Of a DNA stretch of 64,000 bases, positions 4,115 to 62,399 are shown in pieces. The DNA comes from Octopus bimaculoides (lineage: Eukaryota), in assembly GCF_001194135.2 (NCBI RefSeq), contig NC_068988.1:39670386-39734385 (forward strand). The letters run 5' to 3'. The position numbers and the translations under genes are program-made. The first letter of the stretch is position 1, and the number at the start of each line of letters is the position of its first letter. The notes under the pieces are model-generated. The model saw only the letters and a list, made by a program, of their open reading frames with translations, was not told where the DNA came from and made no database searches.

Positions 4115-4960
4115 NNNNNNNNNNNNNNNNNNNNNNNNNNNNNNNNNNNNNNNNNNNNNNNNNNNNNNNNNNNNNNNNNNNNNNNNNNNNNNNNNNNNNN
4201 NNNNNNNNNNNNNNNNNNNNNNNNNNNNNNNNNNNNNNNNNNNNNNNNNNNNNNNNNNNNNNNNNNNNNNNNNNNNNNNNNNNNNNNNNNNNNNNNNNNN
4301 NNNNNNNNNNNNNNNNNNNNNNNNNNNNNNNNNNNNNNNNNNNNNNNNNNNNNNNNNNNNNNNNNNNNNNNNNNNNNNNNNNNNNNNNNNNNNNNNNNNN
4401 NNNNNNNNNNNNNNNNNNNNNNNNNNNNNNNNNNNNNNNNNNNNNNNNNNNNNNNNNNNNNNNNNNNNNNNNNNNNNNNNNNNNNNNNNNNNNNNNNNNN
4501 NNNNNNNNNNNNNNNNNNNNNNNNNNNNNNNNNNNNNNNNNNNNNNNNNNNNNNNNNNNNNNNNNNNNNNNNNNNNNNNNNNNNNNNNNNNNNNNNNNNN
4601 NNNNNNNNNNNNNNNNNNNNNNNNNNNNNNNNNNNNNNNNNNNNNNNNNNNNNNNNNNNNNNNNNNNNNNNNNNNNNNNNNNNNNNNNNNNNNNNNNNNN
4701 NNNNNNNNNNNNNNNNNNNNNNNNNNNNNNNNNNNNNNNNNNNNNNNNNNNNNNNNNNNNNNNNNNNNNNNNNNNNNNNNNNNNNNNNNNNNNNNNNNNN
4801 NNNNNNNNNNNNNNNNNNNNNNNNNNNNNNNNNNNNNNNNNNNNNNNNNNNNNNNNNNNNNNNNNNNNNNNNNNNNNNNNNNNNNNNNNNNNNNNNNNNN
4901 NNNNNNNNNNNNNNNNNNNNNNNNNNNNNNNNNNNNNNNNNNNNNNNNNNNNNNNNNNNN
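4115..4960. other. Assembly gap (others at ~17732-18026, 24456-25127, 30673-30753, 40597-40867, 45083-45365, 48084-48138, 60206-60241, 62133-62372)
   Basis: Runs of N, each bounded by microsatellites. Confidence 0.99.
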
Positions 4961-17414: not shown

Positions 17415-18205
17415 CTTTTACTCTTTTATCTTCCACTTGTTTCAGTCATTGGACTGCGGCAATGCTGGGGCAACGCCTTGAACAATTTGTTTTAGTCGAA
17501 TGAATCGACCCCAGTATTAATGTTTTTTTATTTGATAAGTCTGGTACTTATTCTATCGGTCTCTTTTGCCGAACCGCTTAGATACGGGAAAGTAAACACA
17601 CCAGCATCGGTAGTCAAGCGGTGGTTGGGGACAAACACAGACACATACACACACACACACACACATAAACGCACACACACGCGCACATACGTATGTATGT
17701 ATGTATGTATGTATGTATGTATGTATGTATGNNNNNNNNNNNNNNNNNNNNNNNNNNNNNNNNNNNNNNNNNNNNNNNNNNNNNNNNNNNNNNNNNNNNN
17801 NNNNNNNNNNNNNNNNNNNNNNNNNNNNNNNNNNNNNNNNNNNNNNNNNNNNNNNNNNNNNNNNNNNNNNNNNNNNNNNNNNNNNNNNNNNNNNNNNNNN
17901 NNNNNNNNNNNNNNNNNNNNNNNNNNNNNNNNNNNNNNNNNNNNNNNNNNNNNNNNNNNNNNNNNNNNNNNNNNNNNNNNNNNNNNNNNNNNNNNNNNNN
18001 NNNNNNNNNNNNNNNNNNNNNNNNNNATATATGAATATGTACGACGGGCTTCTTTAAGTTTCCGTCTACTAAATCCACTCAGAAGGCTTTGGTCAGCCTG
18101 AGGCTATAGTAGTAGACACTTACCCAAGGTGCCCCGCAGTTGGATTAAACCCGGAACCATGTGGTTTCTAAGCAAACTTCTTACCATACTGCCACGCTTA
18201 CGCCT
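17415..18205 (-). mobile_element. Composite SINE family B copy spanning an N-gap
   Basis: 3' module at 17415-17640, microsatellite and gap, head at 18038-18205. Confidence 0.8.
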
Positions 18206-23800: not shown

Positions 23801-25554
23801 ACATTCTGTACAGTACCAAGCCAACAGGAAAGATTCAATGGGATTATCACATTATAAAAAAAATAAAAAATGACAGTTCAAATCTCTTGAAATCATACTT
23901 TATAGTCTTAAAAAACGAATGAATAATACATGGGTAAAAAATGCGAGTTGGTCGCGGTCGGAATGCCCTAGCAAGATTGAAATGTTTGTACAAAACAAGT
24001 TGCACACTGCTTTTGCTCTGTAAGAGGTTTCTATAGAAGTAATCTGTCTCAAACTTAAACCACTGGAAATAAAGATAGATGTGTTTTCAGCGAGTATTAA
24101 ATTAGCGTCAGTTTCATATCGTAGCGACTTAGGTTAAATATGGCACCGAACATTAAGTAGTAGATAAGGGATTATTTTGGTTCCTTTATTCGCCAAGAAA
24201 GAGTAATATATTAACGAAATTCTACAGCAAAATCTCTTCGGCGAATATAGATTTTTGGATGAAATATAAACATTTTTTTATAGATTTTGTTACTAACGTT
24301 TTATTATATTATGCATGTGTGTGTATGTATGTATATAGGTATGTAAAAAGGCGCATAGGTAGACAATTGGTAGATAGATAGATAGATAGATACAAAAACT
24401 GATTGATAGAAGGATATATAGAGAGGTAGACGGACTGATTTATATATATATATATNNNNNNNNNNNNNNNNNNNNNNNNNNNNNNNNNNNNNNNNNNNNN
24501 NNNNNNNNNNNNNNNNNNNNNNNNNNNNNNNNNNNNNNNNNNNNNNNNNNNNNNNNNNNNNNNNNNNNNNNNNNNNNNNNNNNNNNNNNNNNNNNNNNNN
24601 NNNNNNNNNNNNNNNNNNNNNNNNNNNNNNNNNNNNNNNNNNNNNNNNNNNNNNNNNNNNNNNNNNNNNNNNNNNNNNNNNNNNNNNNNNNNNNNNNNNN
24701 NNNNNNNNNNNNNNNNNNNNNNNNNNNNNNNNNNNNNNNNNNNNNNNNNNNNNNNNNNNNNNNNNNNNNNNNNNNNNNNNNNNNNNNNNNNNNNNNNNNN
24801 NNNNNNNNNNNNNNNNNNNNNNNNNNNNNNNNNNNNNNNNNNNNNNNNNNNNNNNNNNNNNNNNNNNNNNNNNNNNNNNNNNNNNNNNNNNNNNNNNNNN
24901 NNNNNNNNNNNNNNNNNNNNNNNNNNNNNNNNNNNNNNNNNNNNNNNNNNNNNNNNNNNNNNNNNNNNNNNNNNNNNNNNNNNNNNNNNNNNNNNNNNNN
25001 NNNNNNNNNNNNNNNNNNNNNNNNNNNNNNNNNNNNNNNNNNNNNNNNNNNNNNNNNNNNNNNNNNNNNNNNNNNNNNNNNNNNNNNNNNNNNNNNNNNN
25101 NNNNNNNNNNNNNNNNNNNNNNNNNNNTATATAAGTTATAGGTATATATATATACACACACACACACGCACACACACACACACACACACCCACACACACA
25201 CAAAACAGTTGTATGTTACAGATTTGATGCTTTATCACAGAAACATTGCTCTCGCTAACTCAAAGCTCTTAGGATATATATATATATATATATATATCCT
25301 AAGTGTTAGTATAGATATATAAGTATATATATAGATATTAAGGTAGTTATGTGACAAGTAATACTAAACATTCGTTGCGGATGAACATAGTAGTGGTAGT
25401 AGATTAGACTGACTATATTGCCACAAACATCTCATATATCTATTTCTCTTTATATGTCCCTATCTATTTCTGCATGTCTGTATGTATATATCTGTCTCTC
25501 TATCCTTCAACATATACGCATATACCTACAAACAAGTGCACACTAATATACATT

Positions 25555-30666: not shown

Positions 30667-30900
30667 ACACANNNNNNNNNNNNNNNNNNNNNNNNNNNNN
30701 NNNNNNNNNNNNNNNNNNNNNNNNNNNNNNNNNNNNNNNNNNNNNNNNNNNNNATATATATATATATATATATATATATATACGACAGGTTTACACACCG
30801 TACCTGTCAAACAAATTCACTCACAAGGCATTTTTAGGCCCGAAGCTATAGTAGCAGACATTCGCCCAAGATATCTGTCAGTACAGCTGAATCAAAACCA
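30475..30900 (-). mobile_element. Composite SINE family B copy spanning an N-gap
   Basis: 3' module at 30475-30600, (CA)n/gap/(TA)n, head at 30783-30900. Confidence 0.7.
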
Positions 30901-40596: not shown

Positions 40597-41374
40597 NNNN
40601 NNNNNNNNNNNNNNNNNNNNNNNNNNNNNNNNNNNNNNNNNNNNNNNNNNNNNNNNNNNNNNNNNNNNNNNNNNNNNNNNNNNNNNNNNNNNNNNNNNNN
40701 NNNNNNNNNNNNNNNNNNNNNNNNNNNNNNNNNNNNNNNNNNNNNNNNNNNNNNNNNNNNNNNNNNNNNNNNNNNNNNNNNNNNNNNNNNNNNNNNNNNN
40801 NNNNNNNNNNNNNNNNNNNNNNNNNNNNNNNNNNNNNNNNNNNNNNNNNNNNNNNNNNNNNNNNNNTATATATATATATATATATGGAGAGTGAAATAGA
40901 GAGAGATAGAGAGAGAGAGAGAAAGAGAAATAAAGAGAGGGTAGGATAATTGATGTTCGGTGATCGGTTCTTTGTCGCCTACGAAGGAATGAAAGGCAAA
41001 ATTGACTTTCCCGAATTTCGAACTCAAAGTGTAAAGAACCAAAAGAAATACGAACAAAAATTATATTGACCTCGTATAGGTCCATGCGTTACTATTCTGG
41101 AAGATCTGCAGACATCGCTAACGTCCTATCACCCGAGAATAAAAGATAAGACAAAAACGTTCATACTGAGGTTTTGATCAAATAAGGTTTACAGAACAAA
41201 TCGTATACAGGCTACATCCCATAGGAATGTTCCAAAGACACGCAGAGGTAAGAACTTAATAAAAGCGGCACGCTCGAGTAACTTTGATTGTCTTCTACAC
41301 CTAAGCAAAATATATATTTTAGTGCCGCAAATCAAGACATGGGCGCAATATTACGTTGCTGCAATGCAAGACGG

Positions 41375-45082: not shown

Positions 45083-45365
45083 NNNNNNNNNNNNNNNNNN
45101 NNNNNNNNNNNNNNNNNNNNNNNNNNNNNNNNNNNNNNNNNNNNNNNNNNNNNNNNNNNNNNNNNNNNNNNNNNNNNNNNNNNNNNNNNNNNNNNNNNNN
45201 NNNNNNNNNNNNNNNNNNNNNNNNNNNNNNNNNNNNNNNNNNNNNNNNNNNNNNNNNNNNNNNNNNNNNNNNNNNNNNNNNNNNNNNNNNNNNNNNNNNN
45301 NNNNNNNNNNNNNNNNNNNNNNNNNNNNNNNNNNNNNNNNNNNNNNNNNNNNNNNNNNNNNNNNN

Positions 45366-47960: not shown

Positions 47961-48138
47961 TTAAAACATTGATTTACTTATGAAGATAGAAATAAATTAT
48001 AAGTTAATCCCTATATTTTGTATCCGTAAAAATTTTATTTGCAGAGAGCAGAAATTGAAAGACGATATATATATATATATATANNNNNNNNNNNNNNNNN
48101 NNNNNNNNNNNNNNNNNNNNNNNNNNNNNNNNNNNNNN

Positions 48139-57092: not shown

Positions 57093-57894
57093 ACACATTC
57101 GACGCTTTCAACGTTGGTTTATAAGATATTGTCGAATTCGAAAAAACCTATTATTTAGCTTAATGGTAGAGCTCTCAGCCAGTTCTTGAAGGATACGTGT
57201 TGTAATCCCATACCCGCATGCTGGGAACCCGGTTTCCGTCTTCTAAGCGTAAATATTAAATTTTTCTTCTGTGTTCACAATTATACTGCGTTCGAAATTA
57301 CATTTCTCGTCTGTAAAATACTATACACATTCGACGCTTCCAAATTTTGTTTATAATATATATGTATATACTTTTTGCTTGAATGGCACAAATTTAACGT
57401 TTTAGCATAAATCCTGAATTGTTCTATGTATTGATATATATACTTGAAAATGAAAATATAAAAATAAGCCTTCACAAAGAAATATCTTAGGATTGGATGT
57501 GCATGTGTGTGTGTGTGTATTTACATATATATTTATGATGGACTGTCCCGTCTCAGCCGACGTATGAGTGTTCAACTTTTGCAGAACTACCTGCATATAT
57601 GATTTGCTTAAACTGATCAAATATTCGTTTAGCATACTAGCTCACTCTCTCCATCAAGTTGATGTTGTCTGAACAAGTGTACGGTGTATCACGCGTCAGG
57701 TGTTGGAGTAATCGCAGAGCAACGCGAGATGAAGTGTTTCGCCCAAGAACGCAACGTGCCATCTGGCCCAGTTATTGAAATCATGATCGCCACACATACA
57801 CACACACACACACATACACGCACGCACACACGTACACACACACACGCACGCACGCACGCACACAGACGCACACACACAGATACACACACATATA

Positions 57895-58505
57895 GTAAAT
57901 TTAAGCCCAAGGAAAACATCTCTTCCAGCAGGCTATCGACTCACAGTCTGTGTCCATATAGTGTTTGCAAGGGAGGCCATTGCTCCCATCTCTAGACTTA
58001 CGTGATACTCACAGACCATGGTTTTTGGGTGGTTATTTCTGGCTGTTTATGAACGCTTTCTCCACTCGCAAACACTATATATTCTTTAAGCGACACACAG
58101 TTGCTGATCTCGTATAAAGAAAACAAGTTGTTTTAAATCTCTCAACGAGAGATCTACAGTAACAGTACCGAATAGTAAAGTTTATTTGCCAACAGAATTT
58201 GTGTGGCCCTATTAAGGACGATGTTACTGTTGTTTAATCCCCAGGAAAACATCTTTTCCAGCTGGCTATCGACACACAGTCTATGTCCGTACAGTGTTTG
58301 CAAGGGATGTCATCGCTCCCATCTACAGCCTTACGTCATACTCACAGACCATGGTTTCTGGGTGGTTAACCATCCTCAGTGTGAGAAAATTACTGGCTGT
58401 TGATGAACGCCTTGTCCACTCGCAAACACTATACGTTCTTTAAGCGACAGACCGTCGCTGATCTCGTAGAGACAAAATCAACTTGTTTTAAATCTCTCAG
58501 CAAGA
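57895..58505 (-). mobile_element. Retrozyme-like tandem repeat (~1.8 copies of a ~350-nt unit)
   Basis: Two diverged copies offset by 333 nt (GGAAAACATC at 57911 and 58244; GACCATGG at 58014 and 58347). The 58.3-kb copy has an intact HHR. The 58.0-kb copy lacks the CUGAGGA core (24 nt replaced by 3 nt) and has GAAA changed to AAAA. Confidence 0.7.
58341..58385 (-). ncRNA. Type I hammerhead ribozyme motif (minimal, palindromic stem III)
   Basis: Minus strand reads CUCACA CUGAGGA UGG-UUAACCAC-CCA GAAA CCAUG GUC UGUGAG. Stem I is CUCACA/UGUGAG (6 bp), the CUGANGA and GAAA core is intact, stem II is UGG/CCA, stem III is the self-complementary ACCAUGGU, and the cleavage triplet is GUC (cut between 58347 and 58346). 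Stem I extends distally (ACAGCC/GGCUGU). The first stem II pair is U-A rather than the usual G-C. Confidence 0.8.
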
Positions 58506-58510
58506 TATAT

Positions 58511-58577
<67 letters not shown>

Positions 58578-60163: not shown

Positions 60164-60729
60164 CTGGAATAAATACAGAGAATACTTCTGTTATTGTATA
60201 TATATNNNNNNNNNNNNNNNNNNNNNNNNNNNNNNNNNNNNATATATATATATATATATATACAGGCATCAACACAAGGAACACTGGTGGAATATTCTCC
60301 TCACAACATCTGTCAAGTGTAAACATAACAGGCTGAATATTGTTGTATTGCACAAACAAGAATAAAAAAAAAAAGAAACTACGCACTATTATAGAGGTCA
60401 ATTCTCATGCTGTTGTAAATATCTGTTTGAAATCCAAAGAGAATAACTATGGACACTGCTTCGAACCTGCTGTTTCTATTTTAAGAATACAAATTCATAT
60501 TTATACTAAGAAGAATTGGTGCACTGGTTTTGTAAAGTATGCAAGATTGGGGTCTGTGCAATATTTTCATCATACGCTACACTATAACTTTTGCTTGATC
60601 CATAATAACAAGGGATACCACTGTGAATTCCAGAGCTCAATAGAATTTTTGTCTATAACATTGTATTACATTCGGAAATTGTTTTTGCTTGCAGACATAG
60701 GACGTTCAGATGAATGACATTTCTCTTAC

Positions 60730-62132: not shown

Positions 62133-62399
62133 NNNNNNNNNNNNNNNNNNNNNNNNNNNNNNNNNNNNNNNNNNNNNNNNNNNNNNNNNNNNNNNNNNNN
62201 NNNNNNNNNNNNNNNNNNNNNNNNNNNNNNNNNNNNNNNNNNNNNNNNNNNNNNNNNNNNNNNNNNNNNNNNNNNNNNNNNNNNNNNNNNNNNNNNNNNN
62301 NNNNNNNNNNNNNNNNNNNNNNNNNNNNNNNNNNNNNNNNNNNNNNNNNNNNNNNNNNNNNNNNNNNNNNNNATATATATATATATATAGCATATACAT

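What the first reader, a model, noticed from the sequence alone, without database searches (positions are those of the whole stretch)
57895..58505. Retrozyme-like tandem repeat with a complete, dimer-type hammerhead ribozyme
Seen: two copies of a unit offset by 333 nt (about 350 nt once a net 21-nt deletion is restored), with no coding capacity. The minus strand of the right copy folds as a type I HHR (58385-58341) with full CUGAGGA/GAAA core, GUC site, 6-bp stem I with a distal extension and palindromic stem III (ACCAUGGU). The left copy has lost exactly the catalytic core. Established: minimal type I HHRs with palindromic stem III are typical of Penelope-like elements and metazoan retrozymes, which are tandem units of a few hundred nt that self-cleave into monomers, circularise, and are thought to act as dimers. 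Inference: this is a member of a cephalopod retrozyme/HHR-satellite family that may not be annotated. This locus could cut only once, but sister arrays may release ~350-nt circular RNAs. The U-A first pair in stem II is atypical, so activity is not guaranteed.
Basis: partly seen in the sequence, partly recalled or inferred. Interest (0 to 1): 0.88.

Follow-up and report, generated by a model that had tools for sequence, protein, structure and literature searches.

The report
Decayed hammerhead-ribozyme retroelement (retrozyme) copy
This is an old, decayed copy of a small non-coding mobile element that carries a self-cleaving hammerhead ribozyme motif and spread with the insertion hallmarks of Penelope-like retrotransposons: a real but known kind of element, apparently undescribed in this genome.

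Summary
Window 57892-58507 is one retro-insertion of about 1.96 units of a 351-nt non-coding repeat. Its minus strand carries a type I hammerhead (HHR) at 58341-58385. All 12 core nucleotides are intact, with GUC at the cleavage site and a palindromic helix III. The left unit lost the core through a 21-nt deletion.

The unit belongs to a dispersed family (at least 1,669 first-look candidates, roughly 10^3 copies). Copies are 5-19% diverged from their subfamily consensus. All three subfamily consensuses keep the HHR.

Differences between subfamilies preserve pairing through four compensatory double changes, one of which keeps the helix III palindrome (CCAUGG to CCUAGG). The whole unit folds as a rod (z = -8).

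Copies have scattered 5' ends. Their 3' ends join microsatellites by microhomology. Many exceed one unit, and 14 of 52 loci have adjacent inverted copies. These are Penelope-like-element hallmarks, so this is a metazoan non-LTR retrozyme.

Caveats:
- The consensus has an unusual C.A pair of nucleotides between the core and helix II.
- Rfam models miss the motif.
- No locus with two intact tandem HHRs was found.
- No autonomous partner was identified.
- Catalysis, circular RNA and the host species were not tested.

Verdict: a new member of a known kind, of moderate interest.

The parts
57791..57890 (.). (CA)n-type microsatellite flanking the element's 3' end, in the sense of the ribozyme strand. 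It is half of the target microsatellite.
   Evidence: Tandem Repeats Finder rows. Reading the minus strand, the junction is TTTACTAT|ATGTGTGTG.
57892..57899 (-). Canonical 3' terminus of the family (TTTACTAT on the minus strand, unit positions h168-175). It is separated from the rest of the element by a gap of about 52 nt relative to the consensus (h115-167), from a deletion or a template jump.
   Evidence: 20 of 74 sampled elements end at h171-176 with ...AAATAAACTTTACTAT. Window sequence.
57900..58232 (-). Left (3'-proximal) repeat unit, 333 nt. Its hammerhead is destroyed by the 21-nt deletion.
   Evidence: Direct repeat families D2, D3 and D5, the alignment and unit mapping.
57994..58061 (-). 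Remnant of the left unit's hammerhead. Helix III, the GUC site and the 3' strand of stem I are kept. The 5' strand of stem I, the CUGAGGA box and half of helix II are deleted (deletion point 58034|58035).
   Evidence: Family covariance model R1 scores 29.6 bits here, against 92.8 bits for the right copy.
58233..58507 (-). Right (5'-proximal) unit, truncated at its 5' end (h191) where it meets the microsatellite.
58327..58398 (-). Hammerhead domain with the extended stem I, as matched by the family model.
   Evidence: R1 hit, 92.8 bits, E = 3.7e-25.
58341..58385 (-). Minimal type I hammerhead, with these sub-features:
- stem I 5' strand: 58380-58385
- C3-A9 (CUGAGGA): 58373-58379
- helix II with its flanking U...A: 58359-58372
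- G12-A14: 58356-58358
- palindromic helix III (ACCAUGGU): 58348-58355
- C17: 58347
- predicted cleavage: between 58347 and 58346
- stem I 3' strand (UGUGAG): 58341-58346
   Evidence: Sequence, pattern match at 58347-58379 on the minus strand, and family alignments.
58508..58572 (.). (CA)n(TA)n microsatellite flanking the truncated 5' end. It is the other half of the target.
   Evidence: Tandem Repeats Finder rows 58511-58527 (AC) and 58527-58572 (AT). Flank listing.

Best explanation
**What it is.** Window 57892-58507 is one old insertion of a non-autonomous, non-coding retroelement of the metazoan 'non-LTR retrozyme' kind. Its unit is 351 nt.

**Shown**
- The element's RNA is the window's minus strand.
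- Each unit folds into a long rod. One end of the rod is the extended stem I of a type I hammerhead.
- Helix III of that hammerhead is an 8-nt palindrome. It cannot close as a hairpin, but it can pair between two ribozymes.
- The family spread by copying RNA into microsatellites. The 3' junctions lie at internal unit positions that share microhomology with the target repeat.
- The 5' ends are truncated at variable points.
- Template read-through often exceeded one unit and ran seamlessly across the cleavage-site junction.
- Adjacent inverted copies are frequent.
- This copy keeps one intact ribozyme core. The other was lost to a 21-nt deletion.
- The sampled family is 5-19% diverged.

**Inferred**
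- Multimeric transcripts self-cleave at GUC/U as dimeric hammerheads.
- The resulting monomers are circularised by a host RNA ligase.
- A Penelope-like element's reverse transcriptase and GIY-YIG endonuclease copies the circle or multimer into nicked microsatellites.

**Confidence.** The 0.8 is for the classification and the retro-insertion history. I put the claim that the family's master ribozyme was catalytically active at about 0.55.
For: **Repeat and motif.**

**Family size**
- At least 1,669 first-look candidates; 57 scored matches at 75-89% identity.
- Strict HHR pattern: 33 genome hits against 0 in the reversed control.
- Looser pattern: 112 hits against 9.

**Core conservation.** All 12 core nucleotides are identical in the three subfamily consensuses.

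**Structure-preserving change**
- Subfamilies A and B differ at 19 of 351 positions. Eleven of these are at paired positions and all eleven keep pairing.
- Three are compensatory doubles: h21/h299 G-C to A-U, h51/h271 C-G to U-A, and the helix III centre AU to UA.
- Subfamily C adds a G-C to A-U change in helix II.
- Tool counts on the HHR alignment: 88.9% of cells paired against 16-42% when partners are slid.
- Tool counts on whole units: 91.1% of cells paired against 36-49% when slid. Double-change cells number 54 against 26 +/- 5.6 in shuffles, reached by 0 of 500.
- All 33 CCWWGG hits are AT or TA, never AA or TT.
- A sister family has a different but complementary stem I (CUGUG/CACAG).

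**Folding**
- Whole unit: MFE -133.1 kcal/mol against -89.7 +/- 5.4 for shuffles, z = -8.0.
- The dimer is predicted to form the intermolecular ACCAUGGU duplex: -52.2 against 2 x -21.3 kcal/mol.

**Insertion anatomy (74 elements in 52 loci)**
- 3' ends: 31 at h163-187 and 19 at h214-232, abutting (TA)n, (CT)n or (TG)n.
- 5' ends are scattered.
- 34 elements are longer than 351 nt.
- 14 of 52 loci have adjacent inverted copies.
- This matches the PLE hallmarks in PMC8557442.

**PLE presence.** PLE-type GIY-YIG ORFs are abundant: 112 matches over cut-off among 150 scored, from 2,261 candidates.

**Age of the duplication.** The two window units share only 2 derived changes, against about 15 private changes in the right unit and 34 in the left, 21 of which are the deletion. 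The duplication therefore dates from the insertion.

**Literature.** The definition of non-LTR retrozymes and their link to PLEs comes from PMC7229834, PMC4209133 and the preprint 10.64898/2026.07.22.740005.
Against: - **No Rfam support.** No hammerhead model reaches even E = 10 on this copy. A consensus-like copy is also missed.
- **Atypical core junction.** The consensus places a C after A9 and an A before G12, so the usual G10.1-C11.1 pair does not abut the core. PLE-type minimal HHRs cleave poorly in vitro (PMC4209133).
- **No partner.** No autonomous partner sharing sequence with the unit was identified. The one PLE locus fetched was largely withheld. None of the first 60 loci has an RT/EN ORF beside the element.
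- **Short copies only.** No element longer than 1.96 units was seen, and no locus has two intact tandem HHRs.
- **Neutral decay of copies.** Divergence from the consensus is 7.0% in the core, 9.2% in stems and 9.8% elsewhere. Constraint is therefore visible only between subfamily consensuses, which amounts to a few events.
- **Biased sample.** Loci were chosen by similarity to the window copy or by an intact HHR. Fractions such as '65 of 74 cross the junction' are inflated by that choice.
- **No RNA evidence.** No expression or circular RNA data were available.
Confidence: 0.8

Rival explanations
1. A structured, PLE-dependent non-autonomous element whose hammerhead-like motif is a non-catalytic vestige. 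On this reading the conserved feature is the rod or hairpin, recognised for example by the reverse transcriptase, and no self-cleavage or circular RNA is involved.
For: - C and A are interposed between the core and helix II.
- Rfam models do not detect the motif.
- The thermodynamic MFE pairs CUG of the core with CAG instead of leaving it open.
- Most compensatory changes lie in the rod rather than in the ribozyme proper.
- PLE minimal HHRs show low activity in vitro (PMC4209133).
Against: - All 12 core nucleotides are kept in the three subfamily consensuses and in sister families that have a different stem I and helix II.
- The palindrome-preserving AU-to-UA change in helix III, and the helix II G-C to A-U change, have no role in a plain rod.
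- An axolotl retrozyme HHR with a U.U mismatch at the base of helix II still cleaves as a dimer (PMC7229834).
Confidence: 0.25
2. A SINE-like element of the Schistosoma Sm-alpha type, in which the hammerhead trims upstream read-through sequence and defines the 5' end of a linear template RNA. No circular intermediate is involved.
For: - 55 of 74 sampled copies contain a single HHR position.
- The family is dispersed rather than arrayed.
- AAUAAA sits about 10 nt upstream of the commonest 3' end, h175.
Against: - 5' ends do not pile up at the cleavage site: 4 of 74 lie within 6 nt, against 2.5 expected.
- Copies retain the ribozyme upstream of the site and run seamlessly across it.
- A second class of 3' ends at h214-232 reads through the AAUAAA/h175 site.
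- There is no tRNA-like head and no A-tail.
Confidence: 0.1
3. A local tandem duplication or small satellite carrying a chance hammerhead-like motif.
For: Only two units are present at this locus. One chance match to a loose HHR pattern occurs in 4 of 100 shuffled windows.
Against: - The unit and motif recur at roughly 10^3 dispersed loci on many contigs.
- The two units share almost no derived changes.
- Element ends are anchored and join microsatellites.
- The stems covary.
Confidence: 0.02

Closest known systems
Metazoan non-LTR retrozymes (Cervera & de la Pena 2020, PMC7229834; Li, Clavereau & Pollet 2026 preprint, 10.64898/2026.07.22.740005)
   Same: - Non-coding unit of a few hundred nt (351) with GC of about 0.39-0.44.
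- Type I HHR with a weak palindromic helix III suited to dimeric action.
- Head-to-tail partial repeats, and no LTR, PBS or PPT.
- Highly structured unit RNA.
- Co-occurrence with PLEs.
- The preprint reports that 75% of retrozyme families reach at most seven repeat units and that the share of monomers ranges from 0 to 1, so short copies fit the kind.
   Different: - No arrays beyond about 2 units were seen in the sample.
- No locus with two intact HHRs was found.
- The consensus has a C.A pair of extra nucleotides between the core and helix II.
- 3' junctions sit at internal unit positions chosen by microhomology with the target microsatellite.
- Expression as circular RNA was not tested.
Minimal / dimeric hammerheads of Penelope-like elements (Cervera & de la Pena 2014, PMC4209133)
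   Same: - Type I topology.
- Short palindromic helix III.
- An extra nucleotide between A9 and helix II.
- Occurrence of close inverted pairs.
- Within-genome families rich in compensatory changes.
   Different: - Here the motif is not in the pseudo-LTR of an element with an RT/EN ORF.
- Stem I is long (6 bp plus extensions), not 4-5 bp.
- Helix II is 4 bp, not 6-8 bp.
- There is an additional nucleotide (A) between helix II and G12.
Axolotl HHR_Amex2 retrozyme (350-bp repeat; PMC7229834)
   Same: - Similar unit size.
- A mismatch at the base of helix II (U.U there, C.A here).
- A helix III too weak for monomeric action. The axolotl motif cleaves much better as a dimer.
   Different: - Axolotl repeats form very large arrays: about 126,000 HHR motifs in the genome, roughly half of them of this type.
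- They are experimentally shown to be expressed and circularisable. Neither is shown here.
Schistosoma Sm-alpha SINE-like elements and newt satellite 2
   Same: Dispersed or tandem units of about 330 nt that carry a type I HHR.
   Different: Canonical G10.1-C11.1 pair. The newt repeats are true satellites. The anatomy of Sm-alpha insertions was not compared here.

Membership tests
Hammerhead ribozyme, type I | Conserved core: C3 U4 G5 A6 N7 G8 A9, G12 A13 A14, the A15.1-U16.1 pair, and H17 before the cleavage site. | tested here: met
   The window copy has CUGAGGA...GAAA...U C. The core is identical in the three subfamily consensuses. 14 of 28 unselected copies keep all 12 positions.
Hammerhead ribozyme, type I | Three helices around the core, with helix I open, supported by covariation. 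| tested here: met
   - 88.9% of cells paired on the HHR alignment.
- 91.1% paired on whole units, against 36-49% when partners are slid.
- Compensatory doubles in stem I extensions, helix II and helix III.
- A sister family has a different complementary stem I.
Hammerhead ribozyme, type I | The G10.1-C11.1 pair directly abuts A9 and G12. | tested here: not met
   The consensus reads A9-C-GGGU...ACCC-A-G12. The window copy has U...A through CpG decay.
Hammerhead ribozyme, type I | Recognition by curated covariance models (the Rfam hammerhead families, e.g. RF00163). | tested here: not met
   No hit at gathering score or at E <= 10 on the window copy. None at E <= 1 on a consensus-like copy, although RF00163 finds other HHRs in the same genome.
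Hammerhead ribozyme, type I | Site-specific, Mg2+-dependent self-cleavage. | not testable with these tools
   Needs in vitro transcription assays.
PLE-type dimeric/minimal hammerhead (PMC4209133) | Very short helix III with a palindromic sequence that allows an extended intermolecular helix. | tested here: met
   - Helix III is ACCAUGGU or ACCUAGGU.
- All 33 strict hits have AU or UA at the centre.
- The centre pair counts are AU 17 and UA 13.
- Cofolding predicts the 8-bp intermolecular duplex.
PLE-type dimeric/minimal hammerhead (PMC4209133) | Location in the pseudo-LTRs of an element encoding RT and a GIY-YIG endonuclease. | tested here: not met
   No RT/EN ORF lies within 1.5 kb of the element in the first 60 loci. 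The element is therefore non-autonomous.
Metazoan non-LTR retrozyme (PMC7229834) | Type I HHR inside a non-coding repeat unit of about 170-400 bp, with low GC and no LTR, PBS or PPT. | tested here: met
   The unit is 351 nt. GC is 0.39-0.44. The longest stop-free stretch is 53-76 aa.
Metazoan non-LTR retrozyme (PMC7229834) | Head-to-tail tandem copies, from dimers to multimers, so that two ribozymes flank a unit. | tested here: inconclusive
   - 34 of 74 elements exceed one unit. The maximum is 683 nt.
- 5 elements span two HHR positions, and none has both intact.
- No tandem pair appears among the 33 strict hits or the 100 listed looser hits.
Metazoan non-LTR retrozyme (PMC7229834) | Expression as linear and circular unit-length RNA. 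| not testable with these tools
   No transcriptome data were available.
Metazoan non-LTR retrozyme (PMC7229834) | Mobilisation by, and sequence relationship to, Penelope-like elements. | tested here: inconclusive
   PLE-like insertion hallmarks are present and PLE endonuclease ORFs are abundant. No partner sharing sequence was retrieved.
SINE (Pol III-derived) | A tRNA-, 5S- or 7SL-derived head and an A-rich or LINE-derived tail. | tested here: not met
   ARAGORN finds no tRNA-like sequence. The 3' ends abut (TA)n, (CT)n or (TG)n with no A-tail.
Satellite DNA | Long head-to-tail arrays. | tested here: not met
   Copies are dispersed over many contigs and are at most 1.96 units long in the sample.

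The most novel reading that the evidence does not exclude
This genome's retrozyme superfamily uses a hammerhead architecture not captured by current models: a conserved 1x1 internal loop between the catalytic core and helix II, with one extra nucleotide after A9 and another before G12. The pair is C.A here and A.A in an abundant sister family. On this reading the variant is catalytically active as a dimer. In addition, the microhomology-chosen internal 3' junctions and the copies longer than one unit would be genomic footprints of reverse transcription primed on circular RNA. The responsible enzyme could be a (TA)n-targeting PLE such as a Naiad, a clade that itself lacks hammerheads.
Probability: 0.2. 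Interest if true: 0.6.

Novelty: new member of a known kind. Interest (0 to 1): 0.4.

Why it matters
**What it adds**
- It adds a mollusc-type genome to the list of animals with hammerhead-bearing non-LTR retrozymes.
- No paper in the searched library links hammerheads to a retrozyme family in cephalopods.

**Sequence-level observations that bear on open questions**
1. Selection on the whole unit's rod structure and on the dimer palindrome is visible between subfamilies.
2. The 3' junctions sit at internal unit positions that match the target microsatellite. This argues for priming on a template with no fixed 3' end, meaning a circle or a multimer.
3. The atypical core/helix II junction escapes Rfam models, so such elements are probably under-annotated.

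**Why the locus itself is minor**
This particular locus is a decayed relic with no evident host function.

Tried and rejected
1. **Rfam scan.** No hammerhead hit on the window (gathering score), on the 1-kb region (E <= 10) or on a consensus-like copy. I read this as model blindness, not absence, because the motif and its covariation are clear.
2. **Genome search with my own covariance model R1.** I used patterns instead.
3. **Autonomous partner.**
   - The single locus fetched (L071) has its RT region withheld as N and no similarity to the unit.
   - The partner was not identified.
4. **In-vivo cleavage footprint.** I looked for a pile-up of 5' ends at the cleavage site. There is none: 4 observed against 2.5 expected. 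The apparent starts at h349 turned out to be copies with internal deletions.
5. **Tandem arrays of the sister family.** At a period of 303-333 nt there were 0 hits.
6. **Species identification.** A zinc-finger ORF from locus L022 gave an uninformative result, with hits at only 35-63% identity across all animals.
7. **Stronger conservation of the core in individual copies.** Not seen: 7.0% divergence against 9.8% elsewhere.
8. **SINE, satellite and chance-motif readings.** Rejected.
Full report
**1. The observation**

The region holds two direct copies. 57900-58035 matches 58233-58368 at 88% identity with an offset of 333. 58035-58123 matches 58389-58477 at 87% with an offset of 354. The change in offset comes from a single 21-nt gap in the left copy, between 58034 and 58035, where AACCATCCTCAGTGTGAGAAA is missing.

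On the minus strand the right copy reads 5'-CUCACA CUGAGGA UGGUUAACCACCCA GAAA CCAUGG UC|UGUGAG-3'. C3 is at 58379 and C17 at 58347. A loose hammerhead pattern hits the 64-kb window once. Dinucleotide-preserving shuffles give 0.04 hits on average, and 4 of 100 shuffles give a hit.

No ORF of 120 aa or more overlaps the region, and ARAGORN finds no tRNA-like sequence.

**2. It is a family, and the ribozyme is ancestral**

The window lies on contig C8 of a 2.34-Gb assembly. The right unit finds 57 scored matches at 75-89% identity on many contigs, out of 1,669 first-look candidates.

The full unit is 351 nt. It corresponds to the right copy plus the 78-nt stretch 58155-58232 that follows the left copy. 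From here on I use 'h' coordinates on the ribozyme strand, where h1 is the first nucleotide 3' of the GUC site.

The family consensus around the ribozyme is GUGAUUGU CUCACA CUGAGGA C GGGU AACC ACCC A GAAA CCAUGG UC | UGUGAG U AUCAC. The 21 nt missing from the left copy are present in the consensus, so the left copy suffered a deletion.

Pattern counts across the genome:

| Pattern | Genome hits | Reversed control |
|---|---|---|
| Strict: CTGAGGA-N12-16-GAAACCWWGGTCTGTGAG | 33 | 0 |
| Looser: CTGANGA-N12-16-GAAACCWWGGTH | 112 | 9 |

In a sample not selected on the ribozyme (loci L001-L030), copies differ from their subfamily consensus by 9.8% outside the ribozyme, 9.2% in its stems and 7.0% in the core. 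14 of 28 keep all 12 core nucleotides. Per-element divergence is 5-19%, and the window element is at 10.4%. Individual copies are therefore neutrally decaying relics. Any evidence of function must come from comparing lineages.

**3. Evidence of selection on RNA structure**

Three subfamilies can be told apart:
- A has CCAUGG in helix III.
- B has CCUAGG in helix III.
- C has CCUAGG plus helix II GGAU/AUCC in place of GGGU/ACCC.

The A and B consensuses differ at 19 of 351 positions. Eleven of these fall at paired positions of the predicted structure, and all eleven keep pairing. Three are full compensatory doubles:
- h21/h299, G-C to A-U
- h51/h271, C-G to U-A
- the centre of helix III, AU to UA, which keeps the 8-nt palindrome

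The other five are wobble-compatible single changes. Subfamily C adds a G-C to A-U double in helix II. Only one weakly supported difference breaks a pair. None of the 12 core positions differs between the three consensuses.

Tool counts agree:

| Alignment | Cells paired | Slid controls | Double-change cells | Shuffled |
|---|---|---|---|---|
| 52 ribozyme segments | 88.9% | 16-42% | 38 | 17.3 +/- 2.8 (0 of 500) |
| 30 whole units | 91.1% | 36-49% | 54 | 26.1 +/- 5.6 (0 of 500) |

These cells reflect a handful of inherited events, so the count of independent events is about four doubles plus several wobble changes.

All 33 strict pattern hits have AU or UA at the W W positions, never AA or UU. 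The centre of helix III would be an unconstrained loop in a monomer. A palindrome-preserving double change there is what the dimer model predicts.

The whole consensus unit folds far better than chance: -133.1 kcal/mol against -89.7 +/- 5.4 for shuffles, z = -8.0. It forms a long rod that continues stem I. Cofolding two ribozyme segments predicts the intermolecular ACCAUGGU duplex (-52.2 against 2 x -21.3 kcal/mol).

A sister family in the same genome shares ...CCCAGAAACCAUGGUC. It has the canonical CUGAUGA box, a different helix II and a different but complementary stem I (CUGUG/CACAG). Its flank is distantly homologous to this unit.

**4. Insertion anatomy points to Penelope-like elements**

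I mapped 74 elements in 52 independent loci. In ribozyme-strand orientation:
- **3' ends cluster.**
  - 31 lie at h163-187. 20 of these are at h171-176, reading ...GGCAAAUAAACUUUACUAU and typically followed by (TA)n.
  - 19 lie at h214-232, reading ...UUUUUCUCUCU followed by (CT)n, or ...CUCUAUA followed by (TA)n or (TG)n.
  - The junctions therefore sit where the element shares microhomology with the target microsatellite.
- **Microsatellite flanks are enriched.** A perfect dinucleotide run of 8 nt or more lies within 30 nt of the 3' junction in 20 of 61 elements. In control windows from the same loci the rate is 10.7%.
- **5' ends are scattered**.
- **Many copies exceed one unit.** 34 of 74 are longer than 351 nt (maximum 683 nt) and run seamlessly across the h351|h1 junction.
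- **Inverted neighbours are common.** 14 of 52 loci carry an adjacent inverted copy.

Partial tandems, adjacent inverted 5'-truncated copies and a microsatellite insertion bias are the hallmarks described for Penelope-like elements (PMC8557442). The anchored-3'/variable-5' polarity also shows, independently, that the ribozyme lies on the RNA template strand.

PLE-type GIY-YIG ORFs are abundant in this genome: 112 matches over cut-off among 150 scored, from 2,261 candidates. Canonical PLE-type minimal hammerheads are also present. None of the first 60 loci has an RT/EN ORF beside the element, so the family is non-autonomous.

The window copy fits this picture:
- The 5' end is at about 58507 (h191), against (CA)n(TA)n.
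- The canonical 3' terminus UUUACUAU is at 57892-57899, against (TG)n on that strand.
- There is a gap of about 52 nt relative to the consensus (h115-167).
- The 21-nt deletion removed the second ribozyme's core.
- The two units share only 2 derived changes, against many private ones. The duplication therefore dates from the insertion and is not a later local event.

One caveat applies to the fractions above. The loci were chosen by similarity to the window copy or by an intact ribozyme, so the fractions are biased.

**5. Mechanism**

Shown:
- a structured non-coding RNA element with a conserved hammerhead motif on the template strand
- retro-insertion into microsatellites with PLE hallmarks
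- templates longer than one unit

Inferred, by analogy with PMC7229834 and PMC4209133:
1. Multimeric transcripts self-cleave through dimeric hammerheads.
2. Monomers are circularised by a host tRNA ligase.
3. A PLE RT/EN copies circles or multimers.

The variable internal 3' junctions and the seamless crossing of the cleavage site fit a circular or multimeric template. They cannot tell the two apart.

The alternative in which the ribozyme defines the 5' end of a linear template is not supported. 5' ends within 6 nt of the cleavage site number 4, against 2.5 expected.

**6. What is atypical**

- **Extra nucleotides at the core/helix II junction.**
  - The consensus has a C between A9 and helix II and an A between helix II and G12.
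  - An extra nucleotide after A9 is a known trait of PLE hammerheads (PMC4209133). To my knowledge the second one is not.
  - Sister families have A...A at the same places.
  - The window's U-A comes from CpG decay of that C. This copy also has a U.C mismatch inside helix II.
- **Rfam misses the family.** Its hammerhead models fail on this family while finding other hammerheads in the genome.
- **Activity is unproven.** An axolotl retrozyme ribozyme with a U.U mismatch at the base of helix II does cleave as a dimer (PMC7229834).

**7. Present-day capacity**

This locus has one intact core and could cut at most once. Among the 33 strict hits and the 100 listed of 112 looser hits, no two lie in tandem within 1 kb. 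One inverted pair exists. Five sampled elements span two ribozyme positions, and none has both intact. With 5-19% divergence, the family looks extinct or nearly so. The sister family has many identical motif copies and may be younger, but I could not fetch its loci.

**8. Classification and novelty**

The element meets the sequence-level definition of a metazoan non-LTR retrozyme, and its ribozyme is of the PLE/dimeric type I kind. It fails the SINE and satellite tests.

The searched literature holds no description of a hammerhead retrozyme family in cephalopods. I could not verify the host species.

Verdict: a real element, and a new member of a known kind. It has an atypical ribozyme junction and informative insertion junctions. 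Interest is moderate.

Noticed in passing
Genome G000, e.g. C3:158974678-158974710(+), C6:20712902-20712934(+), C19:32790557-32790589(-): An abundant sister hammerhead family: CUGAUGA-A-GAGAAAUAACCC-A-GAAACCAUGGUC with stem I CUGUG/CACAG. Many copies have identical motifs, and the flank is distantly homologous to this unit. It may be younger than the window's family. No tandem period of 303-333 nt was found.
   Followed up: partly
Genome G000, loci L061-L070 (e.g. L062:1501-1546(+), L063:1501-1542(-)): Canonical PLE-type minimal hammerheads, such as GUAC CUGAAGAG ACCCAGAACGGGUC GAAAC AUGU GUC GUAC, pass the Rfam RF00163 cut-off. 11 of 74 scored candidates pass, from 186,549 first-look candidates.
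   Followed up: partly
Genome G000, e.g. L071:3071-3500(-): PLE-type GIY-YIG endonuclease ORFs are very numerous: 112 matches over cut-off among 150 scored, with open frames listed up to 693-1096 aa. In L071 most of the 693-aa frame is N, because the sequence upstream of the endonuclease is withheld. The listed frame lengths are therefore not evidence of intact genes.
   Followed up: partly
Window 57994-58061; L053:1560-1660; L028:1820-1930; L022:1237-1372: Several copies have independently lost the ribozyme core or helix II through small internal deletions, while keeping the stem I flanks. This suggests the hairpin-rich ribozyme region is prone to deletion.
   Followed up: partly
Window 57701-57760: A short stretch just upstream of the (CA)n tract resembles sequences beside family copies in L002 and L045 (77-88% identity over 42-61 nt). 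It is probably part of another interspersed repeat whose microsatellite tail served as the target.
   Followed up: partly
Window 4115-4960, 17732-18026, 24456-25127, 30672-30753, 40597-40866, 45083-45365, 48084-48138, 60206-60241, 62133-62372: Runs of N totalling 2,779 bases, either assembly gaps or withheld stretches. They explain the stretches that appear open in all six reading frames in the ORF list.
   Followed up: yes
Unit positions h160-165 (consensus); lost from the window's 3'-proximal unit: An AAUAAA hexamer lies about 10 nt upstream of the commonest 3' end (h175) on the ribozyme strand. Even so, insertions carry no A-tail, and a second class of copies reads through to h214-232.
   Followed up: no
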